Positions 1 through 32,732 of a DNA stretch of 64,000 bases are shown here, piece after piece. Each line of letters opens with the position of its first letter. Within the stretch, counting starts at the first letter, position 1. Source of the stretch: Mobula hypostoma (Eukaryota); the NCBI RefSeq assembly GCF_963921235.1, contig NC_086110.1, positions 13,330,001-13,394,000 on the forward strand, in the 5' to 3' direction. A program made the translations under genes and the position numbers. Under the pieces are notes generated by a model that saw nothing but the letters and a program-made list of their open reading frames with translations, was not told where the DNA came from and searched no databases.

Positions 1-1591
1 ACTCCGCACATTGACAATGAAGTTGAATCTAATTTAATCTAATCTAAAAAAAAAATCTTGAACGTTCCAGTTTGAACTTAGATATTACTCTCAGAAGCCG
101 TCCTTCATTTCGGGAAGTGCTACAAACGCTGATAGAAGTTTCAAAGGAGTTCAACTATAATGAAGCCAGTGGTATATGGCAACCTTGTTCTGGTGATGTG
201 TAAAGTTGCTGCAGCAAATATCTCTATGTAAAAGTAAAAATATGCGCTCAAATTGGGAAAGTAATTAACGAACACAAAAAAAACGTTTCCAGTTGTAGAC
301 AGATGGGTATACAACCGATAAAAAATTAATATATGCTAACAGGAGAATCCAGGTAGGACAAATTTAATAACATTGAACTGCTGGAACTCTGAAGTGAAAC
401 AAACAAATAAAACACAATGTAGATCAGTAAACACGAGAGCAAAGAGAAACGGTTCAAGTTTACATTGCTCTCTGGGAAGCGGTGTTCAATATGAAAGGAC
501 AACGTTTTCTCTTTCCCAAGATGTCGTTGGAGATTTTCAACTTCTGGATTAAGTCCAAAATGTGAGATGACAATACATTTATATGTTGTAGGCATTTCTT
601 TCATAATTGAGGACGATAATCATTCAGCGTAGCCTCGTGGAGTATTAAGCGCCTTGTGGAGTTTCGTTACATGTGGGTATCATTGTGCACCAGATACTAC
701 ACGGTTTATTAGAAGCATATTGGATTCCATTGCAGGTCATGCACTGCTCTGCAGCTCTTTGTTGGGAATCGGAGTTAAAAACTACATATGACTTTCCAAA
801 GCAAGTATTCGTTGCATTTTCAATTTTGATTGCTGTGCCTTCAAATCAGATGTAGCATATATTGCCGGATTTCTAACTTTTGGGATACTGGGAGGATTGG
901 GGGTAGTTTTGAATTATGGGGTTTATTGCGGGATTATTTTCTTCAGTTTTATTCACTTCTTGTATTTTTTCCCATTATGGAGTTCCGGAACACGCCTGTT
1001 TTCTATATGGTTACACTCATCACCGCCATCTTTGATTCGCCCGCGTTGGTATGCGTGTAAAGAACAATATTTTATGGTAGTTAAACAGATAAACGCTATT
1101 AGTTGGAACGTATGTGGCTGGAATCACCCTATCAAGAGAAAGAGGACCTTTCAAATTATTAATCGATTCCAGCCCGATATAATTTTTGCTGACTAAACGC
1201 CTATCAGAACGGGTGATCAAAATAGATATTTTAAAACGTGGAAAGGCCTTCAATACCATGCTACCCGTCAAAATAAAACAAAGGGAGTATCTATTTTTAT
1301 TAAATCTAGTATTTTATTTATCCAAGAAGACATCATCTCAGATATTAATGGTAGATTTTTAATTGTTGAAGGAACAATTTGTAGTAGAAAATTGTCCTGG
1401 TTCATCTATATGGAGCTATTGCAGATGATGCTGCTTTTTTAAAAAATGTATTTGGTTTATTACGAGACTTAAAAGAATATATGTTGCTGATTAGGGGTGA
1501 CTTCCACTGTTGTTTAAATGCTTTAATCGACAAGAGTTTAACCAATCAGCAGCTTCCAAGTTGTTCAGCATCACTTATTAAATCCTTTTTT

Positions 1592-2135
1592 GGTCCCCTA
1601 ATCTGAGGAAAGACATCCTTGCCATAGAGGGAGTACAAAGAAGGTTCACCAGATTGATTCCTGGGATGGCAGGACTTTCATATGAAGAAAGACTGGATGA
1701 ACTGGGCTTGTACTCGTTGGAATTTAGAAGATTGAGGGGGGGGGGATCTGATTGAAACGTATAAGATCCTAAAGGGATTGGACAGGCTAGATGCAGGAAG
1801 ATTGTTCCCGATGTTGGGGAAGTCCAGAACGAGGGGCCACAGTTTGAGGATAGAGGGGAAGCCTTTTAGGACCGAAATGAGGAAAAACTTCTTCACACAG
1901 AGAGTGGTGAATCTGTGGAATTCTCTGCCACAGGAAACAGTTGAGGACAGTTCATTGGCTATATTTAAGAGGGAGTTAGCTATGGCCCTTGTGGCTACGG
2001 GGGTCAGAGGGTATGGAGGGAAGGCTGGGGCGGGGTTCTGAGTTGGATGATCAGCCATGATCATAATAAATGGCGGTGCAGGCTCGAAGGGCCGAATGGC
2101 CTACTCCTGCACCTATTTTCTATGTTTCTATGTTT
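1592..2135 (+). mobile_element. 5'-truncated CR1 LINE inserted in L1 ORF2
   Basis: DRLDAGRLFP..TRGHSLRIEGKPFRTEMRKNFFTQRVVNLWNSLP and a (TTTCTATG)n tail. The L1 frame resumes after it. Confidence 0.92.
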
Positions 2136-5100
2136 CTTTTCAATTGATTATGGTTTGATTGAAATCTGGAGAAATCTACCTCCTAATGATAGAGATTATT
2201 CTTTTTATTCACATATTCATAAAATATTCGAGAATTCATTATTTTATAGCTGATTTCCGATGTTTGTCCAAAGTCCAGAAATGTGAACATGACGCTATTG
2301 TTGTTTTGGATCATGCACCTTTAAGCTTAACTTTTGAATTGAATGATGTTGGTAATGTAAACTTGTCTTGGCGTTTTCCAGAAAATTCATTACAAAGTTC
2401 GGACTTTGTGAAATTTATTGTGACCCAGATTTTTTTTTTCTTTTTATAAGATGAGACATGTGTCGAAATAGATTATATGAGATACATTTAAAGCATATTT
2501 GCGAGGTCAGATAATCTCCTATTTGGCGAAGCTTAAGAAACAGACGAAAGTAGCGTTGGATATGATTTCAAAACAAATTAAAGACTTAGATAATACTTAT
2601 GCAGTCTGTCCTAATATTGATTTATTTAAACAAAGGGTTGAACTTCAATCACAATATAATGTACTATTAACTTATCGTACTGAAGTAAATTTGCGTAATT
2701 AAAAAGTCAATTTTATGTGTTTGGAGATGAAAGTATTAAGCTATTAGCATCCCAACTAAAGGCAGCTAGAGGTAAAAGACAAATTTTAAAAATTCGTAAA
2801 GGAGATGATAGTGTAGCTTGTAATTATGAAGACATTAATACAATTTTTCAAGACTTTTACAGGGAACTCAATGAATCTCAGTTTCCAGCTGATCCTTCTA
2901 AAATGAATGCCTTTGTACAAAAGATTGACTTTCCTAAAATATCTGTTGAAGATCAACAAACTCTTGATACTCCTCTTACTGAAAAAGAAATTCAGAAAGC
3001 TATTTTTTTAATGTAATCTGGTAAAGCTCCTCGATTGGATGGTTTTTCTGTAGGATTTTATTGAAAAAATAAAGAATTGCTTACTCCTTATATGTTGGAA
3101 AAGCTTAAGGGTTTTTTTTTGTTAGGAGCGTTACCTTTCACATTTTATGAAGCTTCTATCTCTTTAATTCCTGAGAAAGATAAAGACCCTACTGGTTGCA
3201 TTTCATATAGACCTATCTCATTATTAAATGTGGATGTGAAAATTCTTTCAAAAATAATGGCTAATGGACTGGAGAATATTCTAGCTAAAATGATTTCTCA
3301 GGACCAAACAGGTTTTATGAAAGGCCGTTATTCCTTTTCTAAATCTCGGAGACTGTTAAATAGTATATACTCATCCCTTTCTAGGACTCCCCAATGTGTT
3401 GTTTCTCTTGATGCTGTAAAGGCATTTGATGGAGTTGAATGGAAATGCTTATTTAACGTTTTAGAGAAATTCAACTTAGGTACTAATTTTAATGAGTGGA
3501 ATAGAATGATATATAAAAGCCCTATTGCCACTGTTATTACTAATAATTGCAGATCCCCTTTTTTCACCTTTCGCCAGGTACGAGGCAAGCATGTCCGTTA
3601 AGTCCCTTGTTATTTAATTCGGTATTGGAACCTTTAGCTATTGCCTTCATGAAACTAAAGATCTTCAAGGAATTTACATAAATGGGACTATTCGTAAGAT
3701 CTCTCTTTGTGCTGATGATCTCTTAGTTTATGTTTCGAATCCTGTAGAATCCATTCCTAGTTTATAGAAATTATTAAATGAATTTGGAAAGTTTTCAGGA
3801 TATAAACTAAACCTGCATAAAAGTGAATTATTTCCTCTAAATGATTCTGCTTCTATATATGATGACATTCCTTTCAAAAATTACGCACTCTTTCAAGTAT
3901 TTAGGTATTATCATCACTAAGAAATGTGGAGACCTTTATAGAGCTACTTTAGCTCCCTTGGTGGATTTTATGGAGCAATTAGTTTCTAGATGGAATCTAT
4001 TTATACTTTCGTTAACCGGTCGAATTCATGCATTTTAAATGATGATTTTACCAACATTCTTTTATGTATTTCAAAATATTCATTTTTTTAACTAAGAAAT
4101 TTTTTGATCAGGTTGACTCTATTATTTAATCTTTTGTTTGGAATAATAAAAGACCAAGAATTGGAAAATATAATTTACAAAAATTAAGAAAGGATGGTGG
4201 TCTTGCTCTGCCTAATTTAAGAATGTATTATTGGGCGGTTAATATACTTTATGCGTCTTCTTGGTTATATTGGACTAATTAAAATGAACGAGCACCTTGA
4301 TTTGATTTGAATTTGAAAGCTGTGAAACCATTTTACCTAACCTGGTTATTAGGAGCCTCTTTACCTTTACAACTAGCCAAAATTTCTATTCTAAATTTAT
4401 ATCCTATGATTAAGCAGTCATTAGGAATTTGTAGCAGTTTTGTAATTTTTATAATCTTAAAAAAATAACCTTCTGAGTTTAATTTATCGAAACTATTTAT
4501 TTAAACTTTCACTTAGAGATCCTACCTTTTTTCTTTGGAGGAATAAAGGAATATATTCCTTCATGGATCTGTTCCAAGAAGGCCCATTGATGCCCTTTGA
4601 GAAATTAGTAACTAAATATTCTCTCTCGGACTCACATTTCTTGCAAAATCTTCAGGTCACATATTTCTTACAAGAATATTTCAGTAATTTTCCATATATA
4701 CAAGATTCTGACCTGTTAGACACTATTTTAAAAATGAATCCTTTAGTGAAAGGGTTTATAGGGAAAATTTATAATTTACTATTACAACAGGATAATTATC
4801 CTTTACTTAAAATTAAGCAAGATTGGGAAAGAGAGCTTAACATCACCTTGATAACAGAGGATTGATTGCGAATTTTGAAGTTGGTTAACTCTTTGTCGAT
4901 TTGTGCCAGTCACTCTCTAATTCAATTTAAACTTGTACATCGTTATTATTTGACAAAAGAGAGACTGTTTAAAATATTTTCTAATGTTTATAGTCAGTGT
5001 GATAGATATAAAACTGAGACAGCTGCATTGACACACACGTTTTGGTCGTGTTCTGTATTCAAACAGTTTTGGAAATCTATTTTTTCTACAATTTCTAAAG

Positions 5101-5603
5101 CTGTAAAAATCAATTTACGACCTAATAAATTGACAGTTTTGTTCGGTATAATCCCTCAATATATTCACGGTATTTCTATATCAGACCAACGTGTCATTGC
5201 AGTTGTCACATTCCTGGCCCGATGGGCTATTTTATTAAAATGGAAAGATGCCTCTTCTCCCACTTTGATGCCATGGTTCTCTCAGGTGATGCTATGTCTC
5301 AGTTTGGAGAAAATCAGAAGTCGAACTTCTGATCCTCGATTTGACTTTGAGAAAAGATAGGGCTCTTTTGCTCGCTCTATCATTTGATTTGAGTTAATTA
5401 AGATGTCCCCCTTCTGATTCTTGGGTAAATGGATTTGGTTGGCGGATTGATATCTTTCTTTTATGGAAGCGTGTATGGTGTATAGCTCCGGGTTTCTGCT
5501 CTCAATGTTTTTTTTTTTGTTCGTAGGGTTTTTGTTGTTTTAGTTAATAGGCGTTCTTTTTTTCTGCTTTATTTTTCCAAAAAAAAAATAGCTTTCACAT
5601 TTT

Positions 5604-5989
5604 AAAGTTGCTGATGAATGCAGCAGGCTAGGCAGCATCTCTAGGAAGAAGTGCAGTCGACGTTTCTGGCCGAGACCCTTCGTCAGGACTGGGTCTCCCT
5701 GGGCCTCCTGTCCCATGATCTTCTCATACCCCTTCTGCCGATCACCTGTCCAGGTCTTGGCTCCATCCCTCCCCGCCCTGTCTTCTCCTATGATTTTGGA
5801 TCTCTCCCTCCCCCTCCCACTTTTAAACCTCTAGCTAGCTCTTTCTTCAGTTAGTCCTGACGAAGGGTCTCGGCCTGAAACGTCGACTGTACCTCTTCCT
5901 AGAGATGCTGCCTGGCCTGCTGCGTTCACCAGCAACGTTGATGTGTGCCGCTTGAATTTTCAGCATCTGCAGAATTCCTCGTGTTTGAA
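5604..5989. mobile_element. Penelope-type inverted-repeat non-autonomous element
   Basis: Inverted arms (..gtcgacgtttctggccgagacccttcgtcaggact / agtcctgacgaagggtctcggcctgaaacgtcgac..) around a pyrimidine-rich core. Near-TSD CTTT(C/T)ACATTTT at 5592-5603 and 5990-6001. Confidence 0.7.
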
Positions 5990-6318
5990 CTTTTACATTT
6001 TGTTTTTTCTTATTATTATTGATATACTGTTTAGCTTGGTTGATAGCTTAACTCTGATTTTACAAATTTATATGTTGACTTGATCAATTTATGTTTTTTG
6101 TTGCTTTATAAGAATAATTAATAAAAAAGATTTAAAAAAACATATATTGCGAAATGATTCATGCGTGTACTGTATTTTCCTATTGACCACTACACCGCGA
6201 TTCTCGTAAGCCGACATTTGACATTTAAAACATCTCAGTCTTTGATTTACGTTTAATTATTCGTCACACGAAGCATGTCTAACAGCCTAACTTCCATTAC
6301 TATATATTACCGTTCATC

Positions 6319-6351
6319 TTAAAGCAACTGGTTATGAACTATTGTGGAATC
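6319..6351 (-). CDS. Exon 6, terminal coding exon (DSTIVHNQLL*)
   Basis: Strong acceptor tgcttcctattgtctttcAG 189 nt after exon 5, phase 0, stop TAA at 6321-6319. A possible ATTAAA poly(A) signal lies at 6257-6252. Confidence 0.6.
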   Translation of the reverse strand, partial: DSTIVHNQLL

Positions 6352-9300
6352 CTGAAAGACAATAGGAAGCAGATTGAACAGGAATATTCATATCCACACT
6401 GGATATATACTTCAAAATAAAAAGTTGTCCGATAGTTTCATTCTTCCCTACTGCGTTCCAAATGTTTAAACAAAATAAATTTATAATATCTCTGCTATAC
6501 GTATACGCGGCTCTGAAAGAAGACAAGCCACTTCACCTACCGGCTCTTCATTCTGACATCTGTCCAAAGAACCTGTGTTTGTACCTTAAGAAAAATAAAC
6601 GAAATTATTTGTAATGTAAAAATTGGATATTATTCGTTTGATACCAATCGAATTCATGGCGTAAGAGGAACTGCGGAAGGTACGGATCTTTCAGAAAGCA
6701 TTTTGTGGTAGCAGTTGTCTTAATGCTGTGCATCAATATCATGGTGCTATGCTCAAGAGTCTTTACTTTTAACGAAGCTGTAAAGTGATAATAGTATATG
6801 AGTGGCTGTACTATATTTAAGTACTGTTGTTAAAATAGAAATTAAAATCAATGAGACATGCATGAGTTCGTCAATGTTCTTTATAAAGTGACAGCAAGCA
6901 TGGACCTACCCCAAGCTGCTTACGCTTCAAAATATAGACCTGCCATTGTATCCAAAACGACATTTGAAGTATTCCAAAGGGATATAACGGCATTTATGAA
7001 CAAGATACCGCATGTAAATACAGCGAGTAGACTGGTGGAATTAATGCATTTTGAGATCCAGCTTGTGTTGTGCCTGCTGATTATCAATGTAATCAGGTTC
7101 GACCATATCAATCCCTGTGTAATCATGCTGTACGACAGTTATTCTTTTTGAAGTTAAATATCTTTAGCGCATCAATTTTTCAGGAATAGATGTGATATTT
7201 CTCAGCAATCAGGGTTCTTACCTTGCGATCTCTTTAACTTGACTTTCACCAAAATTATTATCAGAGCTAAAATTGCCGATCCGCCCACTGCATATGCCAA
7301 ATTCAATTTAGTATTAGAGTCTTGTGGATCTATAGGGGGGAAACAAGAAACTGTAAAGCATTTATATATCTAAAGCCAAATGCACACGAGAATCAACAAT
7401 GTAAAATATCTTATAGTCTCCTTTGAAATCTCACTGCACAATATAGGAAAATATATCATTAGACAGGAAATGCAAATACCCACCTTTGTTATATCACGAT
7501 GAGATATAGAGTTTTCGTTTTGCTCAATTTTGTCAAACGTTCAGAAGTTTGCTATCTTACAACTACTGCACGAATTCAATTTCTTAATTCGTCCTACACG
7601 ATTTTAGCGAACGGAATAACACGTAAGTTTTTGAATACATTTCCCGTTCAATACTCGCTGTCAATTATTAAGCTTCAAAATTAGTCATTCTTCCGTGTTT
7701 GGGTAGCTGTTCAGTAACTGTTCTGAAGAAAGTCATATTGACCCCAGCACTTTGACTTGTAAGCGCTCCCATCTTACACTGAGCGCAAAAGATTGTGAAC
7801 ATGCTGAAATTCAGAATAGCACTAAAAATCCTGGAAGAACTTAGCCGATCAGGCAGATCTAAAATGTCGACGTTTAAGGCCGAGATCGAACATCAAGACA
7901 CCATCTTACCTTGGTCCTGGGTGTAACTGAAATTGGCAGGCACCGTGAGGGAGACATGCGACACCAGACAAGTGTAAACATCTTTTCCCCGAGTAGACTG
8001 TGTGATATTCAATAAACTAAATGCTCCGTACAAGCCGTCCACGCTCCGGTTTGTCACGCTTTCTATTCCAGTGCGAATTTGCTTGTTATTTCTTTGCCAA
8101 ACGAATTCTAATTTCTCCGGGTAGAAGGAAGCCGTTTTACAAAGGAGCTTTCGAGGAGACGAAAACCCTCCAACAGGAACAATTTCCACTGGAGATGGAG
8201 GAGCTTGGGTAAAAACAAAGTTATATTGGGTATTTTCGATCCATTTCAGTACAGGTAGATCCCTTTATCTCCCCGCCAACTAGCATGACACTCAACTATC
8301 AAATTAGTTTCCCACCAGTATTGACGAGTATTTAATAAATTATTTCAATTTCACGTTCAGTTTATTGTTTTTCAACCATACACACACACTCCGAAGCGAA
8401 CCTTTGTTCTTCTGGGGCTCAGTTGCAAAAACAGTATATATAGTCACATACAGCACATGTAGTTACCATCCAGCACTGACAGTCACAAAATAAGCAAAAT
8501 AAAATACAGTCAGTTTGGGATAAGGATGAAAGGAAGAGTTCAGAGAATACACCTCGACGGCGAGGCTAAGAGGTCCGAAGTGTGGAGCATTCTCTTTTGA
8601 ATGGTATTTGAGTTTCATTGCACATTTGGGCTTGCGGCAGGCGTTGGCTTTGAAAACCTGACTACAATTGGATTTTTAATTTCCTATCAAGACTGAGCTA
8701 CAAAACCCAAAATATCACAGATTTCTATAGTACGAATGCACATGGAGTTTAATATTCTGGCAGCTCAGCTGCTTAGGCAGTTTTTCAAGTCTTGGGGTTG
8801 AGCTTTCTAGTCATAAGCATTCAGTAATAGAGACTACCCCGGAATGTGAACCATTCCTGGAACAGTTACCCCGTATTGAACGTGACAAATCATCTCCTCC
8901 GTGAAACATCCAGTCATCCAAATGCAAATTATATTAAGTTGATTGATTCTACAGCTCTATCCTTTCTAAAGCCTGAAGACCTGCAGCAAAATGGTCGACA
9001 GTGACTTGGCACTGCTATAGGATCATTTGTGGAAATGATGCCTTGTAGAGGGTCAGTCAGGAATTGAACAACTTCAATTTCACTATGCTCAGTGTTTACT
9101 AAAACTTGAGCCCAATTTTAAGATTTTGTAAACGTGGACCACTTCCGCCACAGCTATGGTCGGTGTCTAAAAGGGTAGATTCAATAGTTAGATTGTTTTA
9201 TCTGTTTATCACAGCAGTTAGGGTTTCGCACTGCCTACAATAGTCATCCTGAGCGTTGCCTGACTCCACTTCCCACGCCAATACCGACGTCAACGTTCTT

Positions 9301-12300
9301 GGCTTTCTCAAATTCTAGGTGAAGGACAATTCTAAGGTGAAAAAAAATCGAAGGGCTTCGACAGATATAAGCATAAAGGGATAGCGACAGACAAAATTGA
9401 TCCATTTGAAGATCAGCGGGTTTAACAATGCATGGAGCCGAAAGAGCTTGGACCTTATATATTTCCATTCGTATTTATTCGGGAGACGTACACAGAGACT
9501 AAGGCAAAACAGAAAGAGTATCATGGCCCATATACCGATTACAGTCTTGAGGCAAATTAGGGTGTAGAAGTCCCCAGAACATGGCAAGGTGTCCCATCGG
9601 ACCTTTTCGAAAGCTAGTGCAGGAAGTGAAAGGGCCCCGATAGAGGTATTCAAAATGTCCTTACCCGTGGGTAAAATGCCGGAGGACTAGAGTAAACTAA
9701 TGTTTTAAGACCATATAACTATAGGATATAGGAGCCTAATTAGGCCCTTTGGCCCACCAAGTTTGCTCTGCCATTTCATCATTGCTAATATATTCTGTTC
9801 AGCCCCAATCTCCTGCCTTCTCCCCATAGCTCGTCATGCTCTAACCAATCAGGAATCTATCAACCTCTGCTTGAAATATCCATAAAGGTTTGGTCTCCAT
9901 ACCTGCCTGTAGCAAAAAAAAAAAAAAAAATCCACGGGTCCTGGACTCTCTGGCCATAGGCTGTCCTCTTCATCTCCTCTGGTCTTAGACTCTCCCACCA
10001 TAAGAAGCATCCTCTCCACATCCACACAATCAAGGGCTTTCACCTTTCTTAAGGGTTCAATGCCGTTGCCCCTATTTTTTTTTCTGAACTCTAGTGAAAT
10101 GAGGCCTAGAGCCATAAAACGTTCTTCATATGATTAGCTATTGAAGTTTGGAATCATTGTCATAAACCTCCTTTGAATCTTCTCCAGTTTCAGCATATTC
10201 TTTCCAAGAAAAGGGGTGTAAAACTGCCCACAATACGGCGTGACGCCTCACCAGTGCTTTATAAAGTCTGAATCCTACATTCTGGCTTATATATTCTATT
10301 CCTCTTGGAATGAATGCGACCATTGCATTTACCTTCCTGACCACAGACGCAACCTGTATGAAATACTGCACACGGACTCGCAAGTCCCTTTGCACCTCAG
10401 TGTTTTTTGTGTTTTCTCTCCAGTTGGAAAATATTCAAAACTTTCACACCCTCCACCAAACTGCGTGCCCACACACTTTTCGACACTGTATTCCATCGGC
10501 CATTTCCTGGCCTGTCCTCCTAATCTGTCTCAGTCCTTCTGTAGCTTCTCTATTTCCTAAAACTACTTGGCTGTCGACCTCTCTTCATATCGTCCGCAAA
10601 CTTTGCAACAAACCATCAATTCCATCGTCCATATCATTGACATGTGACCTTAAACGAATTGGTTACAACACAGACCCCTGTGGAACACCTTTAGTCACGA
10701 GCAGCCAACCAGAAAATGCTCCCTTTATTCCCATACTTTGTCTCTTACCAACCAGCCACTGCTTTATCCACCCTAGAAGTTTTCCTAAAATACTTTGAGC
10801 TAGTAGCTTGTTTAACAGCCTTGTGTGTGGTACTTTGTCAAAGGCCTTCTGAAAATCTAAGTACACAACAACCAATTGCCTATCTTTATCTATCCGGCTT
10901 TTTATTATTTCAAATATTTCAATCAGATTTGTCTGGTGAGAGTTTCCTTTGAGGAAATCATGCTGACAATGGCGTGTTTTATTATGTGTCTCTAAGTCAC
11001 CTAAGACCTGATCCTTAATGATGGACTCCAACATCTTGTCAACCAGTGAGGTCCGAGTGATCGGCCTATAGTTTCCCTTTTCTGCCTCCTTGCCTTCTTG
11101 AAGAGTGGAGTGACATTTGAAAATTTCCAGTCTTCCAGAACCATTCCAGAATCTAGTAATTCTTGAAAGACCTTTACTGATGCCTCCAGAATCTCTCAGC
11201 AACTTCTATCAGAATCATGAGATGTACATAATCTGGTCTAGGTGAATTACCTACTTTCAGACCTTTCAGTTTCCTAATAACTTGCTCTCCAATTATGTCT
11301 CTAGTTTTGCCGTTGTTCAAGGTAGACTGTCGGAATAAGCCGGGATATTATAGACTAGTTGGTATTACAGTAAAGCGGGTGATTTATTGGAAGATATTCC
11401 AAAGATTAGGATATATAAATATATAGATAGACTGGGCTTGTTTGGGAATAAGCAATATCATTTTGTGCAATGTAGGCTCTGTCTGACCAATCTTAATGAG
11501 CTTTTCGAGCGGGTTACCATAGATCTTTGATAACAGTGGATATGGTCAACATGGATTTTAGCAAAGGAACGTCGACTCAGACCATGAGACGACTGCGTCG
11601 GGCATTTTCATGCTCTACAAAACGCAGATTGGAAGTCTGTGTGGGGCGCCACTCCTCGCACAGACTAGAGCAATGAGTGATAAAGTTCCTTGCTCAAGGG
11701 CAACACACACGCGGCCACAGCTCAGACTCGAAGTAACGACGTTGAGATAACTAGACGAACGCCTTAACCACTTGGCCACGTGCCCAACACTTTGGAAATG
11801 TTCCGCATGGGGATAGTGGGCTAATCAAGTACGTTCGCTTGGCATTCAGGATGAAGGAGTAAATTGTGTCTGACGTTGGCTTCGCGGGAGAAGCCAGAGT
11901 ATGGCAGTAGATAGTTGTTCTTTGAACGAAGGCCTTTAACTGGTGGTGTGCCACATGGTGATCAAAGCTTGCAGCGGGTTAAGGACCAGGTGTAAAAACG
12001 GGCTGAAAATAGCAGATAGGATTTAATGAAGGTAATTGTAAGCTGTTGTTCTTTGAGAAGACAAACCATTCTCGGATATACACATTGAACGAAACTGGCA
12101 TTGAGGAGTGCGGTAAAAAATGATCTTGGAATTATAGATCGATAATTCATTGAAAATGGAGTCAAAGGCGGATGGTATCGTAAAGATAACCTTTGTCATA
12201 TTGGCCTTCATATATCAGAGTATTGAGTGTAGAAGTTGGGATGCCATGCTGAAGATGTATTAGACGTCAGTGAGAACAAATTTGGAGTATTGTTCGCAGT

Positions 12301-14002
12301 TCTGGTTACATATCTGCAGGAAAGTTATCAATATGATTAAATGAGTAGAAAGAAAACTTACAACATGTGGCAGGAATTTGAGGACATGAATTATGAGGAA
12401 AGTTTAACAGGTAAAGATTTTTTTCCATGATTCGTAAGAGAACGAGCGAACATTTGATAGAGGTATACAAAATTATGAGGGATGTAGATATGGTGGATCT
12501 AAGCCTGCATTATCCACTGAGGTTGGGTGAGAATGTAATTGGAATTCATAGCTTCAGAGTGAAATGAGAAGTATTAAAGGCGAACTTGAGGGGAAACGTC
12601 TTCACTCTGACGGTGATGCTATTGTGGAGTGAGCTGACAGCGCAGGTGTTTGCGCTCGACTCCCTGCGCTTTACTATTCAACCGTATCAAAATTCATCTC
12701 AATCTTGAGAGGTCGATATTTCTGCCCGTTTTGTATGGTGAAAGAAGTATAGATTTTGCTAATCCTGCATGATAAAAGTTGGAATGACAATTTGTAGTGC
12801 ATGCGATAAATTGTTACTTGATGTTGGAATTAACTCATTTGGAGCTGGGTATTATTCCTGTATACTTGTTGATGGAGAAATGGAGCATTGTGCTGCTACA
12901 GGCAGATCCTTTGATAGAGATTACTCTATTTAAGTATTAATATTTTGCGTCCTCTGTGATGCGGAATCGAGTTATCCAACTCCAGCCATTCACATTAATA
13001 TTAATATTATTTCAGCCTCTTGCTTGCAACACAATCCTAACCTCGCTTGAAAAGTAATTCGTTATATTCAAAGTACCTTCGCGATAATGAGGGTAACGTC
13101 CTAAGCTATCACTAACCTTGGACATTCGGTTTAATTGGGAGATAGCTGATGAGCAGGGCTGGACGAACAGCAGTGGGGAAGGAGCCGGGGAAGTACGATA
13201 CGATTAACGGAATCAACTCCACTATGCGCCTAATAGTTGCTACATGAAATGTGATTAATTTTTCTGCTCTTTATAATTCTGAATTTAAAATCACTGGACT
13301 GGGGTATATTTTAACACGGAAATCAAATGTATTCTCACCGTTTGTTTTATCAAGTAGAAATATTTCGTTTTATCCCCATCACTAAGTTTGATGTAAAATG
13401 CACAGAGCCGAAAATCTCGAAACAGCCACACTCACCGAACACAGTGAACTTGGTGCCACCTCCAGTCCCTAAGTATTGTTCCTGAAACTTTACTGCACAG
13501 TAATACAGCCCAGAGTCGCTGAATTTGACATTCCAGAGTACAAGTGTTCCTCTTCCCCTTTCTACAGTAAATTGTCTTCTGTTGTCCCTTTCTAAAAACC
13601 CCTTCTCGCCTTTCCTCCACCAACGAACGTCAACGGTATCGTGTGTTAGCGGTAATTTGCAGAACATCGTAACATTCGCACCAACCGGGACGTTCAGGTC
13701 CCGAGGGAATTGAGATACTTCCTTCGCCGTTACTTTGACGACTGCCGGATAAATAAGCAAGAGTATTAATAACAGTTAAACACAGTGAATTAACAAAAAC
13801 TGATGACGTAAGTCATTGGACATCTCAGAGTGAAAGACGACCGACTAGATAAAAAAAAACTGCAACCGAATATGCTGCAGGCACCCAGGGTTAGATATTA
13901 TTAAATAGAATATTCAATTCGGAAACGGCGTGTATAAATCAGCATACTTAGCCAAGTAATAGCCAGAAGTGCCATGTACGAAACCGTAAACTTCTCCGCC
14001 AT
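6319..14002 (-). CDS. Six-exon non-rearranging Ig-superfamily receptor: leader, V(J), C1, TM, cytoplasmic tail (279 aa; NKp30/VJ-C1/SIRP-like)
   Basis: Exons 14002-13948, 13741-13436, 8203-7910, 7329-7222, 6584-6541 and 6351-6319 are joined by GT-AG introns with compatible phases (1,1,1,1,0). They sum to 840 nt with no internal stop. Protein: MAEKFTVSYMALLAITWLIVKVTA-KEVSQFP...YYCAVKFQEQYLGTGGGTKFTVF-APPSPVEIV...YTCLVSHVSL...QDQ-DPQDSNTKLNLAYAVGGSAILALIIILVKVKLKRSQ-GTNTGSLDRCQNEEP-DSTIVHNQLL*. Confidence 0.85.
6541..6584 (-). CDS. Exon 5, cytoplasmic
   Basis: Acceptor ttatttttcttaAG, donor GTAGGT. 44 nt open in phase 1: GTNTGSLDRCQNEEP. Confidence 0.75.
7222..7329 (-). CDS. Exon 4, connecting peptide, transmembrane segment and basic stop-transfer
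   Basis: Acceptor ttcccccctatAG, donor GTAAGA, 108 nt, phase 1-1. LNLAYAVGGSAILALIIILV is followed by KVKLKR. Confidence 0.88.
7910..8203 (-). CDS. Exon 3, C1-set Ig domain
   Basis: Acceptor tttttacccaAG, donor GTAAGA. Contains LLCKTASFYP..LEFVW, NRSVDGLY and YTCLVSHVSL, which are C1-set signatures. Confidence 0.95.
9480..11260 (-). mobile_element. CR1 LINE fragments in intron 2
   Basis: ORF 10663-11202 GNYRPITRTSLVDKMLE..VVYLDFQKAFDKVPH..GVPQGSVL, with further 3' CR1 pieces downstream. Confidence 0.88.
11575..11785 (-). mobile_element. tRNA-derived SINE
   Basis: Minus strand begins GGGCACGTGGCCAAGTGGTTAAGGCG (A-box), has a degenerate B-box (TTCGAGTC), then a GCCCTTGAGCAAGGAACTTT core typical of fish and shark SINEs. 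Confidence 0.7.
12000..12650 (+). mobile_element. Old CR1 3' fragment
   Basis: Degenerate homology to the CR1 RT C-terminus (attgagtgtagaagttggg..tttggagtattgt..ttcactctga..tgtggagtgagctg). Confidence 0.6.
13436..13741 (-). CDS. Exon 2, V-set domain with germline J-like G strand
   Basis: Acceptor ttatccggcAG, donor GTGAGT. Contains B-strand Cys (TMFC), C-strand Trp (VRWW), DSGLYYC and GTGGGTKFTV (GxGTxLxV type). Confidence 0.95.
13781..13801 (+). other. RSS-like heptamer plus nonamer with a non-canonical 5-bp spacer
   Basis: CACAGTG-aatta-ACAAAAACT in intron 1, about 40 bp before the V exon acceptor. Confidence 0.4.
13948..14002 (-). CDS. Exon 1, signal peptide
   Basis: ATG at 14002 gives MAEKFTVSYMALLAITWL plus 1 nt, followed by donor GTATGC. 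Hydrophobic leader, phase 1 as in Ig/TCR genes. Confidence 0.85.
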
Positions 14003-20967: not shown

Positions 20968-23900
20968 CTGCAGCGCCAATGCTTGGCAGTCTTGACAGGT
21001 AGCCTGCTGTGATGTTCTCCTTGCCTGATTTGTGCCGCACACAGAACCTGAAAGGTTGAAGTTCCAGGTACCACCTAGTCACCCTGGCATTCCGTTCTTT
21101 CATTGTCTGGATCCAGGTCAGGGCTCTGTGGTCCGTCTGGAGGTCAAACTTTCTCCCAAGAATGTATTACCTGAGGCTGTCCAATGCCCACTTGTATGCC
21201 AGACACTCCTTCTCGATTGTGGAGTACCGGGTTTCACGGGGCAGAAGTTTCCTGCTGAGATATGACACAGGACGTTCCTCACCTGCCTTTCCCTGAGCTA
21301 GTACTGCCCCGATGCCTACACATGAGACATCCACCTGCACCAGGAAGCGGCGTTCAAAGTCAGAACTCTGCAACACAGGGGAAGAGCATAATTTCTCCTT
21401 CAGGCCCTGGAGAGCACTTTCACACTCCTCACTCCATTCCACAGGATTACGGGCCAACTTGCAGGTGAGGTTGGTCAATGGGACTGCCAGGGTAGAGAAG
21501 TGAGGGATGAACCGTCGGTACCAGCCCTCTAGGCTAAGAAAAGACCGGACCTGGGTCTTGGTACGAGGCCTGGGGCTGTTCAGAATTACCTCAGCTTTTT
21601 CCACCTGAGCTCGGACTTCTCCTCTCCCCAACTGATACCACAGGTACCGGGTTTCCTCCCTGGCCCACTCACATTTCTGCAGGTTGAGTGTAAGTCCTGC
21701 CGTATTGATTGCACCTACGACTAGACAAAGGTGCTCCAGATGTTCCTCGCAGGTCAGGCTAAAATGACCACATCATCCAAATAGGCGGCGCTGCAGTCCT
21801 CACAACCTTCCAGCACTCTGTCCATAAGCCTCTGGAATGTGGCTAGGGCACCATGTAAGCCAAAGGGCATCACCGTGAACGGAAAGAGGCCTAGAGTGGT
21901 CCTGAATGCAGTGGGAGGCCGGGACTGGCTCTCCAGGGGGACCTGCCAATACCCCTTGCAGAGGTCCAAGGTGGTGATGTAGTTGGCTCTTCCAATCTCT
22001 CCAGCAGGTCCTCAATCAGGAGCATCGGGCAGGCATCGAAAAATGAGATGGCATTCAGTTTCCTAAAGTCAATACAAATGCGAAGAGTTCCATCCTACTT
22101 CGGCACAATGACAATAGGGCTCCTCCACTCACTTTCAGACGGTTCGATGTCTCCCAGCTCCAACATCAAGTGGACCTCCTCCTTCAACGCCTTCACCAGA
22201 CGTTCTGGTACTTGGTAGCATGCCTGCCGTACTGGACTCTGACCTGGTTTGAATTGGATGGCATGCTGCAATACATCTGTATGGCCTAGATTCTGTGTGA
22301 ACAACTGAGGGAATGTGTCGAATATGATTTGCAATTCAACTGGCTTCATACCATGCAGGTGAGAGAGTTCCACCTTGGCAGCTGTTTCCAGGCCTCCACT
22401 ATACCTTCAGAGTCATCTTCCTCAATCACCCGCCGTGCCAGTAGTGAGGTGATGGACGGGGGGCTGCATCTTTCCTCCCAGGGTTTCAAAAGGTTCACAT
22501 GGTAACTTTGCTTTTGTTTCCCCTTCTCCGGCTGCAGGCTCTCATATGTTGTAGGCCTCATCCTCCTTATAACCTCAAAAGGTCCCTGCTACTTGGCCAA
22601 CAGCCTGCTGGCTAAGGTGGCCAGGAGCAGCAAGATCTTTTGACCTGGTTTGAGCTCACCTTGGCATGCCTGCAGGTCATACCACCGCTTTTGAGTCTTC
22701 TGAGCCTCCAGGAGGTTGAGTCTGGCCTCCGCTCGGTACCCTCCGACCGGTCCCTCAGTTGGAGGGCATATTGTACAACACTTTGCCCCTCTACAGTATT
22801 ACCTGCCACCTGCTCCTCCCAGTTCTGTTTCAGCAGATCCAGGGGCCCCTGGACTGACCAACCACAGAGCAGCTCGAAAGGAGAGAATTCGGTAGGTACC
22901 TGAGGCACTTCCCAGTAGGCAAAGAGCAAAAAGGGTAACCACGTATCCCAATCCTTCCCTGTATCAGATACAAACTTTCTGAGCATCCTTTTGAGGGTTT
23001 GGTTAAACCTCTCCACTAGGCCATCTGTCTCTGGGTGATAAAGAGATGTCCTGATAGCGGTTATGCCCAACTCCTTGGTCCGAGTTCCCTGGTCGGTCAG
23101 GATTTCCTCCGGGATGCCTGCACGAGAAAAGAGATGGACAAGAGCTGCACAAGAGCACTGATCAGTCTTGGAGTGGTTACTAACCGGGGAGGAAAAGCTT
23201 CAGGGAATCGTGTGGCATAACCACATACAACAAGAATGTACTGATATCCTTCTGAGCTTTTTTCCAGGGGCCCCACAATGTCCATTGCAATCCGATTAAA
23301 TGGGGTGGTAATCACTGGCCTGGATTGGAGGGGTACTCGGTCTGATTTACGGACATCACTGGGTTTTTGCCACTCTGGGCACGTTTTGCAATAAGTCTGC
23401 AAATCAGTGTACATTGAAGGCCAAAAGAACCAAAAGGCCAACCTGAGATATGTCTTATGGTGACCTAAGTGTCCTGCCCAGGGAATGGTATGTGCAAGGT
23501 GTAGTATAAGTAACCTGCAAATACTTAACACCACTAACCTCCTGTTGCCTGGCTCCTCTCCTTGATAAAGGATGCCGTTCTGAAGGACATACACTGAACC
23601 ACCTACATGGGCGGTTTCATTAGCAGAGGTTAAGACCTTGGTTAACAGAGACTTTAACAAAGGATCAGACTGTTGTAACATGGTGATATTGTCTGGCACT
23701 TCCCACTTAACATCTGTCACTGCATTTTCAGGCATTTCATAAGATAAAGGCGTACCAGTGTGTTTCTCTCACCGCCGTTGCCGACGTGTCTTTCTAGGCC
23801 CTTTGGTTCCAGCATTGCATGGACTACCACATTGGTCTGGCAAAGGTTGCATTCCAGACTGAGCTTGGGTTTTTGCCTGGAACCGTGTCATGACAAAACA

Positions 23901-26650: not shown

Positions 26651-29264
26651 GGTTTCTTGGACGCGGGGCCAGGATGACTGCCGAGGATACTTGCCGAGGT
26701 AAACTGCCGAGCATTCGGATGGGGACGATCCAGAACAGGACGAGGAATGTCCGGTACCTGGCTGGGCGAGGCACATGGACTGGAAGTGAATACGAAGCTC
26801 AGACTTAGACAGGGCTGGAACACGGCTCCTGGACTTGGTCTTGGAACACAGGAACACAGAGCCTTGGACTTGAGCACAGGAACATAGAACAAAGAGACAG
26901 GACCCCTCCTTGGGGACAGGGCATAGGGTTAAGACTCGTACACAGAACACAGAGCTAAGTCTCCTCCTTGGGAACAGGACTTAGGGCCGTGGCTCTACCC
27001 AGAGTCAGGACCCCTCCTTTGGAACAGGACCTAGGGCTGGGACCCTTCTTTGACATGGACACTAACACAAGGGCACAAAGAGACAGTTCTAAACTCAACG
27101 ATAGATAGTTCTTTATCTTGACGTGGCAAGGCGCCGGTCTCACGCCGGCGGTGGAGCTAGACGGCGATACAGGCGAGGACGCAGGGGAGGTTGCAGGCAA
27201 GGTAGCAGGCGAAGGTAACAGACGAAGATTACAGACGAAGGTTAGTGCCGAAGTAACTGTTGAGATGAACCGCCAAAGTAACTGCCAGGGGAGGGGAAGG
27301 GAAAAGTCCAGCAGGGAATCCTTGGTTTGAGAGATATGTATGTGCCAGCCCGCAACGAGAATCGGGATCCTCAATTAAGGCACCCAACAGAACAAGGGAG
27401 AAAACAGGAAAACCCGGAACAAGGATGGGTGGACCGGACCATGAACAGGAATGCGGACTTCACGGACCAGACCATAACACTCAAGTTCCTTCTATGTTTG
27501 ATATGTGCAGGTCATTTATACACCTCAACCCTCTAGATATCATCCTATGATGGAATGGTAAACCAATAATGTACATGGCCTCCTCCTGTAGAATTTCCCA
27601 AATATTCCCATGATCTGGAAGACGGAGAGCTGCTGCAGATAATATTGTTCTGATATCTTCCCAAGATTACTAATAGGTTCTGCTGGGTTGCAACTCACAA
27701 CATAATTAACACAAATTGAACAACAGAGAAGAAAAGTAAATATAGAAGGTTTTGGAAATACCCCATTAGTTTGGCACCTTCTGTGGAGAAAAAGTAGGCT
27801 GGGGAGCATTCACCACGCAGTAAACTCGAAAAATCTTAATCTGACATTTTCCACAGCTGCTTCCTGAGTTGGTGTGGACTCTAAATTTGCTTCCATCCAC
27901 ACTCAGCTCATGCACAGCAAATACTACCCAGCTTATTTGCTACCTTGTTTTTTCGTATTTGTCATTTATAAATATCATGAAACTTCGCGATCCTAGAACA
28001 AACTCCAAATGGTCGCCAATTAGCCAATTAGTACAATATGAGTATTTTTTTTCCTGAATAGCATCTCTCAAGCCTTCACGCTCGAACAATTTCAACATTT
28101 AACTCAAAAATTATCTTCAATTCTCATTTTGTTCATCGACTCTGCTGTGGAACAGTTCTGATACGCTTTGACAATGCAGTATTAAATAAATGTACCATGA
28201 TAAAATGTCAGCATTCACAATTTCAATATAACTTTTTTTTTAACTGAGATTGCGAAGATTTCTTCCGTATTTAAAGTTAAACATTTAAAAAAAACTTTTC
28301 TCCACATTCCATATCTCTGCTCTTGTTAGTATACAGATGATAACACGGTAACACTTAATTCGCCATTTAGCATTCCGAGAATTTAAAAGGACAGAAAATA
28401 CTAGGCATATATAAGCAATACTTCTCTAGCATTTTTTTAGGATTTGTGCTTACATTCATACAAGGCAATTTGTCCTTCTCAATATCTTATCATAAACTTA
28501 AGTGATATCACTTAAATTCCGACGGGCAACTGCTTTAGCTGGAAATTATCGACAATATTTCCAGCTGGACGTTTTCACAATACATTTGTTCGGCGGATTA
28601 TAAGAGAGTTTTTCTCCTGGCATTGACTTTATTTTGTCTAGTTCAGTTCTGATGAAAGGTTTCGGTCTGAAACGTCGACTGTTTATTCATTTCCATAGAT
28701 GTTGCCTAAGGTGCTGAGTTGCTTCAGCGTTTGGTGTACTGCAGCTCTGCATTTTCAACAACTGCAGAAAAGCTTGTGTCTATAAATTTTATCCTGCCTA
28801 GGGTGACAAATCGCAATTATACAATGCTCATCGAAAAATATTCGAATATTTAAAACAGGTATTTAAGTGATATAAAAATGGTTGATATATATGTGTTCTT
28901 GAATGACATATCCTGAGTACAGAAACACATACTTTTCAGAAATTGCTTTACAAGTAGTTTACTTAAGTTAACTTTCTTACTTTTCACTTAAACGTTAAAC
29001 GCGATAACGTGGGTATCTGCAACTTACTCGCCTGAGACGGTGAAACTTCTGACCGCATAGAGTTTCCATGATGTCACCAGCTAACCGTGAGTGCAGTTAC
29101 TTTGCTCTCTATGCTGTCTCGTTTAGCAAAGACATTTTGTACTGGGTGCATCTTGTCATTGCAAAAGTAGAAAAGTTCGCCCTTGAGGATTTATAATCGT
29201 GTTTCACATGCAGAATATGTGCCTCTTTCGGCAAATAATTTACATTTCCATCACCAAACACAAC

Positions 29265-31351: not shown

Positions 31352-32732
31352 TCGAATCAGGGGCCTCAATGACTACAGACCGGTGGCATTGACCTCCCAC
31401 ATCATGAAGACCCTGGAGAGGCTTGTTCTGGAGCTGTTCGGGCCTATGGTCAGGCCACACTTAGATCCCCTCCATTTCACCTACCAGTCCCGACTAGGAG
31501 TTGAGAATGCCATCGTCTTCCTGCTGAACCGTGTCTACGCCCACCTGGACAAGCCAGCGAGCACTGTGAGGGTCATGTTTTTTGACTTCCCCACTGCATT
31601 CAACACCATCCGCCCTGCTCTGCTGGGGGAGAAGCTGACAGCGATGCAGGTGGATGATTCCCTGGTATCATGGATTATTGGTTACCTGACTGGCAGACCA
31701 AAGTACATGTGCTTGCAACAGTGTGTGTCCAACAGAGTGATCAGCAGCACTGGGGCTCCACACGGGACTGTCTTGTCTCCCTTTATCTTCACCATTTACA
31801 CCTCGGACGTCAACTACTGCACAGAGTCTTTTCATCTTCAGAAGTTTTCGGATGACTCTGCCATAGTTGCATGCATCAGCAAAGGAGATGAGGCTGAGTA
31901 CAGGGCTACGGTAGGAAACTTTGTCACATGGTGTGAGCAGGATTATCTGCAGCTTAATGTGAAAAAGACTAAGGAGCTGATGGTAGTCCTGAGGAGAGCT
32001 AAGGTACCAGTGACCCCTGTTTCCACCCAAGGGATCAGTGTGGACATAGTGTAGGATTACAAATCTCGGGGATACGAATTGACAATAAACTGGAGTGATC
32101 AAAGAACACTGAGGCTGTCTACAAGAAGGGTCAGAGCCGTCTCTATTTCCTGAGGAGACTGAGGTCATTTAACATCTGCCAGAAAATGCTTAGGATGTTC
32201 TGCAAGTCTGTGGTGGCCAGTGCGATCATGTTTGCTGTTGTGTGCTGGGGCAGCAGGCTGAGGGTGGCAGACACCAGCAGAATCAACAAACTCATTCGTA
32301 AGTCCAGTGATGTTGTGGGGATGGAACTGGACTCTCTCACGGTGGCTTCAGAAAAGAGGATGCTGTTTAAGTTGCATGCCATCTTGGTCAATGTCTCCCA
32401 TCCATTACATAATGTACTGGGTGGGCACAGGAGTACATTCAGCTAGAGACTCATTCCACCGAGATGAAGCACTGAGCGTCATAGGAAGTCATCCCTGCCT
32501 GAGGCCATCAAGCTGTACAAATCCTCCCTTGGAGGGTCAGACATCCTGAGCTAATAGGCTGGTCCTGGACTTACTTCATAATTTACTGGCATAATTTACA
32601 TATTACTATTTAACTATTTATGTTTCTATTACTATTTATTATTCATGGTGCAACTGTAACGAAAATCAATTTCCCCCGGGATTAATAAAGTATGACTATG
32701 TCTATTACTATGACTATGACTATGACTATGAC
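31352..32732 (+). mobile_element. 5'-truncated Rex1/Babar LINE (RT plus 3' UTR)
   Basis: DYRPVALTSHIMKTLERL..RVMFFDFPTAFNTI..GAPHGTVLSP..KFSDDSAIV..LNVKKTKE. AATAAAG followed by a (TATGAC)n tail. Confidence 0.92.

What the first reader, a model, noticed from the sequence alone, without database searches (positions are those of the whole stretch)
6319..14002. Non-rearranging V-J-C1 membrane receptor, an antigen-receptor look-alike
Seen: one exon encodes a complete V domain plus a J-like GTGGGTKFTV strand, spliced to a true C1-set exon, then TM and tail, with Ig/TCR-style phase-1 introns. There are no separate D/J segments or 12/23 RSSs between V and C. Known: C1-set domains are confined to jawed-vertebrate adaptive-immunity molecules (Ig, TCR, MHC, tapasin, SIRP). 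Germline VJ domains with a G-T-G-x-G-T strand are NKp30-like, and germline VJ-C1 genes have been proposed as relatives of the pre-RAG receptor. Inference: a shark/ray member of that group, combining an NKp30-like V with a C1.
Basis: partly seen in the sequence, partly recalled or inferred. Interest (0 to 1): 0.78.

Follow-up and report, generated by a model that had tools for sequence, protein, structure and literature searches.

The report
Devil-ray SIRP-like inhibitory V-C1 receptor
This is a real gene of the lesser devil ray for a cell-surface immune receptor whose outer part looks like one antibody or T-cell-receptor chain but needs no DNA rearrangement. It is one inhibitory copy of a large shark-and-ray family of paired "brake/accelerator" receptors, so it is an ordinary member of an under-studied but already annotated kind.

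Summary
The first five minus-strand exons are real: split leader, single-exon VJ-type V, one true C1-set domain, TM and first tail exon. All have GT-AG sites, and the four Ig-type introns are phase 1. The window holds no RSS.

The window's product matches RefSeq XP_062923462.1 (Mobula hypostoma, 349 aa) over residues 1-269. That model then continues with an 80-residue tail encoded beyond the window's start. The tail carries TPYASL (ITSM), LTYAVL (ITIM) and ALYADV.

The gene belongs to a family of at least 80 protein clusters. I found it only in rays, sharks and chimaeras, under a mishmash of RefSeq names. About 25 of 65 sampled members have ITIM/ITSM tails, and 18 have a charged TM with a short tail.

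The best reviewed whole-protein match is SIRP-alpha. The V domain alone matches CD79b, CD8-beta, Ig/TCR V and shark VNAR, not NKp30.

This copy has an Arg-TM "activating" twin with a 95% identical V domain. Site patterns suggest V-exon gene conversion within species.

This scan has flagged the same family many times on other DNA of this genome.

The parts
13948..14002 (-). Exon 1: start codon and most of the signal peptide (MAEKFTVSYMALLAITWL + 1 nt). It is a split leader with a phase-1 donor, A|GTATGC.
   Evidence: Identical to residues 1-18 of RefSeq P0183.
13436..13741 (-). Exon 2: end of the leader plus the whole VJ-type V domain. It holds Cys46 and Cys100, WWRKGE, DSGLYYC and the J-like strand LGTGGGTKFTVF. 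Both flanking introns are phase 1.
   Evidence: Pfam V-set 48.3 bits. The AF2 V model has pLDDT 89, with a G strand broken at the GxG bulge. No RSS in the window.
7910..8203 (-). Exon 3: a single C1-set domain (APPSPVEIV...CKTASFYPEKLEFVW...VYTCLVSHVSL...). Both flanking introns are phase 1.
   Evidence: Pfam C1-set 44.6 bits. The best per-domain PDB profile match is Ig lambda CL at 45.8 bits, with UrIg2 domains at 35-37 bits.
7222..7329 (-). Exon 4: stalk without a cysteine, an uncharged transmembrane helix (LAYAVGGSAILALIIILV) and the stop-transfer KVKLKRSQ. The donor is phase 1.
   Evidence: AF2 predicts a helix at residues 220-252. Hydrophobicity scan.
6541..6584 (-). Exon 5: first cytoplasmic exon (GTNTGSLDRCQNEEP), with phase-0 donor CCG|GTAGGT. 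It is the last exon of the gene inside the window that RefSeq uses.
   Evidence: The identity with P0183 ends exactly here, at residue 269.
6319..6351 (-). It is a possible acceptor plus a short open frame. It is not used by the RefSeq models of this gene or of its Mobula birostris ortholog, so it is probably not part of the main product.
6481..6540 (-). Read-through of the exon-5 donor would add VGEVACLLSEPRIRIAEIL*. A RefSeq paralog (P0025, 285 aa) ends in just this form. It is a possible short-tailed alternative product and is untested.
29028..29058 (-). Alternative first exon (MRSEVSPSQA, phase-1 donor GTAAGT) of RefSeq isoform X2 (P0163, 239 aa). This isoform splices straight to the C1 exon and so lacks both signal peptide and V.

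Best explanation
The locus is the 5' three-quarters of a non-rearranging immune receptor gene of the lesser devil ray (RefSeq XP_062923462.1, 349 aa).

Its product is a type I membrane protein. It has one short VJ-type V domain, one C1-set domain, a cysteine-free stalk, an uncharged TM helix and a roughly 100-residue tail. Most of that tail is encoded just beyond the window's start.

The tail carries an ITSM (TPYASL), a canonical ITIM (LTYAVL) and an ITIM-like ALYADV. The most likely mechanism is that of SIRP-alpha and other inhibitory paired receptors:
- The V domain binds a still unknown ligand through its CDR-like loops.
- Src-family kinases phosphorylate the tail tyrosines.
- SH2 phosphatases (SHP-1/SHP-2) are recruited and damp the cell's activation.

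It is one member of a large, tandemly clustered chondrichthyan family. Inhibitory forms alternate with charged-TM, short-tailed forms that would couple to an ITAM adaptor.

This copy has such a twin (XP_062923614.1). The twin's V domain is kept nearly identical, probably by gene conversion, so both should see the same ligand.

Shown here: gene structure, domains, motifs, family membership and the twin. Inferred: expression, ligand binding, phosphorylation and phosphatase recruitment.
For: Gene structure:
- Exons, splice sites and phases were read from the sequence.
- V-set and C1-set pass Pfam cut-offs.
- Residues 1-269 are identical to RefSeq P0183, whose tail holds TPYASL, LTYAVL and ALYADV.
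- The Mobula birostris ortholog P0181 has the same 349-aa layout, with 87% tail identity.
- The AF2 model has both Ig domains at pLDDT above 90, a TM helix at 220-252 and a disordered tail.

Closest known proteins:
- The best Swiss-Prot structural matches of the whole model are bovine, human and rat SIRP-alpha (E 2.5e-17 to 2e-15).

Family:
- 80 clusters reach E 1e-6 or better, 78 of them at 161-463 bits and all from rays, sharks and chimaeras. The only other two score 58 and 47 bits.
- Many members lie on the same 80.6-Mb contig as this gene.
- Of 65 members, 25 have ITIM/ITSM tails and 18 have Arg or Lys in the TM with short tails. The tree needs at least 11 switches of type.

The twin:
- P0162 is 95% identical in V and 88% in C1, but 44% in stalk+TM and 8% in the tail.
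- It falls in a four-row clade with SH-aLRT 97.
- In V, 4 sites group by species and 0 by type. In C1, 4 sites group by type and 0 by species.
Against: - Expression rests on RefSeq models in two species.
- The ITIM tail exons were not seen in DNA, because they lie outside the window. The locus DNA could not be fetched either.
- Identity to SIRP-alpha is only 16-18%, and SIRPs have two C1 domains.
- The two-domain ectodomain also resembles Fab light chains and B7/butyrophilin proteins.
- Tail motifs are short and recur in many receptor families.
- The gene-conversion inference rests on 8 informative amino-acid sites (Fisher p about 0.03).
- No ligand is known, and no cell type is known.
Confidence: 0.8

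Rival explanations
1. A relic of the pre-RAG antigen receptor. On this reading the family is the closest surviving non-rearranging sister of Ig/TCR chains (VJ + one C1 + TM), so it shows what the receptor looked like before the RAG transposon split the V exon. This is not exclusive with the SIRP-like inhibitory function.
For: - It has a split leader, a single-exon VJ, one C1, a TM and phase-1 introns.
- The V-only model matches antigen-receptor-type V domains best: VNAR at 25-28% identity, TCR V-alpha/V-beta, Ig kappa, CD79b, CD8-beta and VpreBJ.
- The C1 profile's best single-domain match is Ig lambda CL at 45.8 bits.
- The family is present in chimaeras, sharks and rays, so it is over 400 My old.
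Against: - No tree with reference Ig, TCR, UrIg or SIRP sequences could be built here.
- Published candidates (UrIg, UrIg2) are linked to the MHC or to the Ig/TCR complex (PMC12227049). The MHC notes of this scan that I saw all lie on other pieces of the genome, and the white-shark member sits on a 193.5-Mb contig, whereas the white-shark MHC is reported on chromosome 19 (PMC10751288).
- Similarity scores among Ig domains at 20-28% identity do not resolve sister relationships.
Confidence: 0.12
2. A germline-joined derivative of a rearranging Ig light-chain or TCR cluster, of the kind common in cartilaginous fish, that later gained TM and tail exons.
For: - RefSeq calls several family members 'immunoglobulin lambda-1 light chain-like' or 'TCR beta chain-like'.
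- Fab light chains are the best PDB structural matches of the whole model.
Against: - Identity to light chains is only 20-25%.
- The J-like strand lacks the Phe/Trp of F/W-G-x-G (family consensus x-G-N-G-T-G-x-x-L-T-V).
- FR2 reads WWRKGE rather than WYQQ.
- There is no C-terminal Cys for chain pairing.
- There is no RSS relic in 64 kb.
- The same architecture and motifs are shared by 78 clusters from chimaera to rays. A recent germline joining would not give that.
Confidence: 0.04
3. A member of the B7/butyrophilin (V plus C) ligand family, as the RefSeq names 'NCR3LG1-like', 'PD-L1-like' and 'CD276 homolog' suggest. On this reading it acts as a ligand rather than a receptor.
For: - CD276, PD-L1, NCR3LG1 and butyrophilins appear among Swiss-Prot matches at E 1e-15 to 1e-13, with the best TM-scores for the two-domain body (0.45-0.51).
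- Atlas structure rows at TM 0.76-0.78 are butyrophilins and B7 proteins.
Against: - The C domain scores 44.6 bits on C1-set but only 13.5 bits (E 0.076) on the butyrophilin C2-set_3 model.
- The V has the GxG J-type bulge strand, which from my own knowledge B7 V domains generally lack.
- ITIM/ITSM tails, and charged-TM twins, are features of receptors and not of B7 ligands.
- SIRP-alpha has the better E-values.
Confidence: 0.04

Closest known systems
SIRP family (SIRP-alpha / PTPNS1, SIRP-beta)
   Same: - Non-rearranging VJ-type V followed by C1-set domain(s), then a TM.
- The inhibitory form has several Y-A-x-L/V tail motifs.
- Paired forms have a basic TM residue and a short tail, with nearly identical V domains.
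- SIRP-alpha is the best reviewed whole-protein structural match (E 2.5e-17).
- RefSeq names many members 'tyrosine-protein phosphatase non-receptor type substrate 1-like'.
   Different: - One C1 domain instead of two. A few family members, such as P0168, do have two.
- Only 16-18% identity.
- SIRP V is not among the best matches of the V alone.
- Orthology, synteny and CD47 binding are untested.
UrIg and UrIg2 (elasmobranch non-rearranging VJ-C1 genes; PMC12227049, PDB 9dmx)
   Same: - Split leader and single-exon VJ domain followed by C1-type domains in cartilaginous fish.
- UrIg2 C domains are among the best PDB sequence matches of the C1 (51.9 bits for the single query; 35-37 bits per domain for the profile).
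   Different: - UrIg has three C domains and is secreted by the liver.
- UrIg2 has nine or more C domains.
- Both are single genes linked to the MHC or the Ig/TCR complex.
- The gene here has one C1 and an ITIM tail, and belongs to a multigene family of paired receptors.
NKp30 / NCR3
   Same: A germline VJ domain with a G-T-G-x-G-T-x-x-x-V strand. This rests on my own knowledge of the human sequence. It is an immune receptor.
   Different: - NKp30 has no C domain, and it has an Arg in its TM.
- It is not among the best 60 PDB sequence matches.
- It is not among the best 30 or 50 structural matches of the V.
Ig light chains and TCR chains
   Same: - V plus one C1 layout, split leader and phase-1 introns.
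- Fab light chains are the best PDB structural matches.
- Ig lambda CL is the best per-domain match of the C1 profile.
   Different: - No V/J segments and no RSS.
- No interchain Cys.
- No charged TCR-type TM.
- It has its own ITIM tail.
- 20-25% identity.
PRARP (Fu et al. 2019, J Immunol, pmid 30770416)
   Same: [quoted passage not shown]
   Different: Could not be compared. The paper is not held, and no PRARP sequence was returned by any search.

Membership tests
VJ-C1 non-rearranging IgSF receptors (descriptive class) | V domain and J-like G strand (G-x-G-T-x-L/F-x-V) encoded in one exon, with no RSS | tested here: met
   Exon 13741-13436 ends ...LGTGGGTKFTVF. No 12- or 23-spacer RSS with up to 3 mismatches in 64 kb.
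VJ-C1 non-rearranging IgSF receptors (descriptive class) | Membrane-proximal domain is C1-set | tested here: met
   Pfam C1-set 44.6 bits against a cut-off of 21. FYPE...W...YTCLVSH motifs are present.
Chondrichthyan SIRP-like V-C1 paired-receptor family (RefSeq models only) | Full-length similarity and shared motifs (WW[RK]xGE, DSGxYYC, PPTPL linker, CKTAxFYPE, VYTCLVSHVSL) | tested here: met
   Alignments A1 and A4. Profile hits score 161-463 bits, all from Chondrichthyes. The tree places it in a clade with SH-aLRT 97.
SIRP family | V followed by two C1-set domains | tested here: not met
   Only one C1 exon lies between V and TM, and P0183 has one C1.
SIRP family | Inhibitory member with ITIM-type tail tyrosines, and an activating member with a basic TM residue | tested here: met
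   TPYASL, LTYAVL and ALYADV are in the P0183 tail. The twin P0162 has Arg in its TM and a short tail. These are motifs only; binding was not tested.
SIRP family | Orthology or synteny with tetrapod SIRP loci, and CD47 binding | not testable with these tools
   Apart from this gene's exons and one neighbour exon, the long ORFs checked in the window are transposon fragments. Flanking DNA could not be fetched.
NKp30 / NCR3 | Single V domain with no C domain; Arg in the TM; closest V similarity to NCR3 | tested here: not met
   A C1 exon is present and the TM is uncharged. NCR3 is absent from the best matches.
UrIg / UrIg2 | VJ plus three or more C1-type domains; single-copy gene in the MHC or Ig/TCR complex | tested here: not met
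   One C1, a multigene family, and an ITIM tail. The defining features are taken from PMC12227049.
Germline-joined IgL | Nested in IgL V and C clades; no TM; C-terminal Cys | tested here: not met
   TM and tail exons are present, there is no C-terminal Cys, and identity to light chains is 20-25%. No formal tree with IgL was built.
PRARP | Sequence relationship to chicken PRARP genes | not testable with these tools
   The paper is not held. No non-chondrichthyan V-C1 relative appeared.

The most novel reading that the evidence does not exclude
The chondrichthyan V-C1 paired-receptor family, of which this gene is a member, is the direct non-rearranging sister lineage of Ig/TCR chains (VJ + one C1 + TM). 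SIRPs would be its tetrapod remnant. If so, it is a living model of the receptor that the RAG transposon invaded. Its V-exon gene conversion between inhibitory and activating twins would then be a pre-RAG way of diversifying and matching receptors.
Probability: 0.1. Interest if true: 0.8.

Novelty: new member of a known kind. Interest (0 to 1): 0.4.

Why it matters
Genes with an unsplit VJ exon joined to a C1 domain are sought as clues to what antigen receptors were before RAG-mediated rearrangement (PMC12227049, PMC10751288). This gene shows that cartilaginous fish carry not only the single UrIg genes but also a large, clustered, fast-turning family of V-C1 receptors with SIRP-type inhibitory and activating signalling.

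The family is present in public annotation under at least eight unrelated names. I found no description of it in the papers I could search.

For this copy, two points stand out:
- The corrected gene model, with the inhibitory tail lying outside the window.
- An activating twin whose V exon appears to be homogenised with it.

This is a typical signature of paired receptors under pathogen pressure. It gives a concrete pair for ligand hunting.

Tried and rejected
- **Locus DNA beyond the window:** The look-up of encoding contigs found nothing on record for isoform X2. For X1 it gave only the gene span, without DNA.
- **PRARP and UrIg papers:** Fu 2019 and PMC10530332 are not held. Word searches for PRARP gave mostly unrelated acronyms.
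- **Relatives outside Chondrichthyes:**
  - The exhaustive V-domain search was swamped by giant multi-Ig proteins. All of its single-V plus C1 hits whose source I checked were chondrichthyan. The nearest others were reptile multi-V proteins without a C1.
  - The profile search scored only the 8000 candidates sharing most words, so a blank beyond sharks and rays is weak evidence.
  - The V-region-only search returned only close paralogs, from 31 candidates.
- **PDB sequence rankings:** these are distorted by summed scores of multi-domain chains, so I used per-domain scores.
- **ITIM tail exons:** I looked for them downstream of exon 5 inside the window and found none. The only tail exon, at 61388-61257, belongs to the upstream neighbour.
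- **Reference tree:** a formal tree against named IgL, TCR, SIRP, NKp30 and UrIg sequences was not built, because no tool returned those sequences as usable records.

Full report
**Observation**

The gene lies on the minus strand. Reading the DNA and assembling it in a script gives these exons:

| Exon | Window coordinates | Content |
|---|---|---|
| 1 | 14002-13948 | leader, MAEKFTVSYMALLAITWL + 1 nt |
| 2 | 13741-13436 | end of leader plus V domain |
| 3 | 8203-7910 | C1 domain |
| 4 | 7329-7222 | stalk, TM and stop-transfer |
| 5 | 6584-6541 | first cytoplasmic exon, GTNTGSLDRCQNEEP |

All introns are GT-AG. The phases are 1, 1, 1, 1, then 0.

Pfam scores exon 2 as V-set (48.3 bits, cut-off 26) and exon 3 as C1-set (44.6 bits, cut-off 21). 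The V exon runs without interruption from the leader's end through DSGLYYCAVKFQEQYLGTGGGTKFTVF, so V and the J-like strand are one exon.

No RSS-like site (heptamer, 12 or 23 spacer, nonamer, up to 3 mismatches) exists anywhere in the 64 kb, where shuffles give about 0.6. The V-C1 intron holds a LINE reverse-transcriptase fragment. There is no second V, C1 or TM copy in the window.

Searching the V domain against 1.84 billion representatives, and then the family, led to RefSeq proteins of Mobula hypostoma.

XP_062923462.1 (P0183, 349 aa) is identical to the window model for residues 1-269, exactly to the end of exon 5. It then continues ADQAAVEHTTPYASLNMRESKRWHKDRQQEECIIYSQTKGSGADKLTYAVLQLPDSKNTPTTTHQNKHALYADVNISKKL.

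These 80 residues are not encoded in window 1-6540. The called gene spans 34,971 bp on an 80.6-Mb contig of GCA_963921235.1.

Isoform X2 (P0163) starts at an alternative exon at 29058-29028. If that exon marks the gene's 5' end, the last exons lie a few kb beyond the window's first base. This position is an inference.

The Mobula birostris ortholog (P0181) has the same 349-aa layout, with 87% identity in the tail. That argues against a chimeric model.

The only ITIM-type exon inside the window, 61388-61257, is the intact last exon of the upstream neighbour.

**What the protein is**

AlphaFold2 on a 56-sequence family alignment gives both Ig domains at pLDDT above 90, a TM helix at 220-252 and a disordered tail. 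Other features:
- The V is short, at 101 residues. Its C'-C'' region is reduced and its G strand is broken at the GxG bulge.
- The stalk has no cysteine.
- The TM (LAYAVGGSAILALIIILV) is uncharged.
- The tail has an ITSM (TPYASL), a canonical ITIM (LTYAVL) and an ITIM-like ALYADV.

**Family**

A profile of 19 members found 80 protein clusters at E 1e-6 or better. Of these, 78 score 161-463 bits. All of them are from rays (Mobula, Hypanus, Hemitrygon, Pristis, Amblyraja, Leucoraja), sharks (Heterodontus, Heptranchias, Scyliorhinus, Chiloscyllium, Mustelus, Carcharodon, Cetorhinus) and the chimaera Callorhinchus.

The scores then drop to 58 and 47 bits. Only the 8000 candidates sharing most words were scored, so absence elsewhere is weak evidence.

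RefSeq names for the family are a mishmash: SIRP-alpha-like, SIRP-beta-like, NCR3LG1-like, Ig lambda-like, TCR-beta-like, tapasin-related-like, PD-L1-like, CD276 homolog and MHC class II-like.

In each species the members listed sit on a single large contig, apart from a few on small unplaced contigs. Earlier notes of this scan place copies from 12.9 Mb before to 250 kb beyond this window.

Of 65 members classified by script, 25 have ITIM/ITSM tails, and 18 have Arg or Lys in the TM core with short tails. The ectodomain tree needs at least 11 switches between these types. This is the pattern of a paired-receptor family.

**This copy and its twin**

In the tree, the window's gene forms a four-row clade (SH-aLRT 97) with three others:
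- its M. birostris ortholog, P0181
- an Arg-TM, short-tailed M. hypostoma gene, P0162 (XP_062923614.1)
- the M. birostris counterpart of that gene, P0158

| Region | Identity to P0162 (twin) | Identity to P0181 (ortholog) |
|---|---|---|
| V | 95% | 90% |
| C1 | 88% | 93% |
| stalk + TM | 44% | 75% |
| tail | 8% | 87% |

Site patterns split cleanly by domain:
- In V, four sites (38, 48, 51, 101) group the two genes of each species together, and none group by signalling type.
- In C1, four sites (180, 186, 192, 196) group by type, and none group by species.

This fits gene conversion of the V exon between the inhibitory and activating genes after the two Mobula species split, with the C1 exon keeping the orthologous signal. 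It rests on eight sites (Fisher p about 0.03) and needs DNA alignments.

**Comparison with known families**

For the whole model against Swiss-Prot structures, the best matches are bovine, human and rat SIRP-alpha (E 2.5e-17 to 2e-15, 16-18% identity). Next come CD276, tapasin-related protein, PD-L1, TCR beta, NCR3LG1 and Ig lambda. Against the PDB, the best matches are Fab light chains at 20-25% identity.

For the V alone, the best matches are CD79b, CD8-beta, Ig kappa V and TCR V. In the PDB they are shark VNAR at 25-28% identity, TCR V-alpha/V-beta, CD79b and VpreBJ.

NKp30 does not appear in those lists. It is also absent from the best 60 PDB sequence matches.

For the C1 profile, the best single-domain match is Ig lambda CL (45.8 bits), with UrIg2 domains at 35-37 bits.

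UrIg and UrIg2 are the published elasmobranch non-rearranging VJ-C1 genes. They have three, and nine or more, C domains respectively, and they are single genes linked to the MHC or the Ig/TCR complex (PMC12227049). The gene here is not one of them.

PRARP could not be compared, because the paper is not held.

Linkage to the MHC could not be tested in the window, where the long ORFs I checked outside the receptor exons are transposon fragments. The eight MHC notes shown (of 110) all lie on other pieces of the genome, which is a lead only.

**Verdict**

This is a real gene that is already predicted in RefSeq. It is an inhibitory member of a large SIRP-like V-C1 paired-receptor family of cartilaginous fish. 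This scan has flagged the family many times on other DNA of the same genome, and my own tests agree with those notes.

The interest is moderate. The family deserves a proper description and phylogeny, and this copy offers a clean inhibitory/activating twin with a homogenised V exon.

Noticed in passing
window 61257-61388 (-): An intact last exon, TKRIGADKLTYATLQLPDSKNTSASKHQNQHSLYADVITAKKL*, behind a cacag acceptor. It is the ITIM tail exon of the upstream neighbour V-C1 gene, whose V, C1 and TM exons lie beyond the window's end.
   Followed up: partly
window 29028-29058 (-): An alternative first exon (MRSEVSPSQA, phase-1 donor) used by RefSeq isoform X2. That isoform skips the leader and V, so its product has no signal peptide. 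It is probably an aberrant or regulatory transcript.
   Followed up: partly
window 6481-6567 (-): Reading through the exon-5 donor gives ...NEEPVGEVACLLSEPRIRIAEIL*. The RefSeq model of a paralog (P0025, 285 aa) ends in the homologous read-through, so short-tailed, ITIM-less products may be made by intron retention.
   Followed up: no
window 10663-11202 (-), 3077-3601 (+), 4866-5360 (+), 23097-23735 (-), 31383-32054 (+), 36863-37990 (-), 57453-59377 (+): Transposon fragments fill most of the window. There are reverse-transcriptase pieces (one inside the V-C1 intron), a zf-RVT, an integrase zinc domain, and an L1-type ORF1 plus endonuclease.
   Followed up: partly
window 39213-51466: A GC-rich, strongly skewed stretch. 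Other reports of this scan have already described it as a tandem array of giant LTRs. It is unrelated to the receptor gene.
   Followed up: no
family proteins P0168, P0173, P0192: Some family members are longer. P0168 (Chiloscyllium, 436 aa) has V-C1-C1 like SIRP-alpha. P0173 (Callorhinchus, 489 aa) matches the V-C1 unit twice. P0192 (Amblyraja, 493 aa) is similarly long, but its domain layout was not examined.
   Followed up: no
window 55607-55738: An assembly gap of 132 N. It was left untouched.
   Followed up: no
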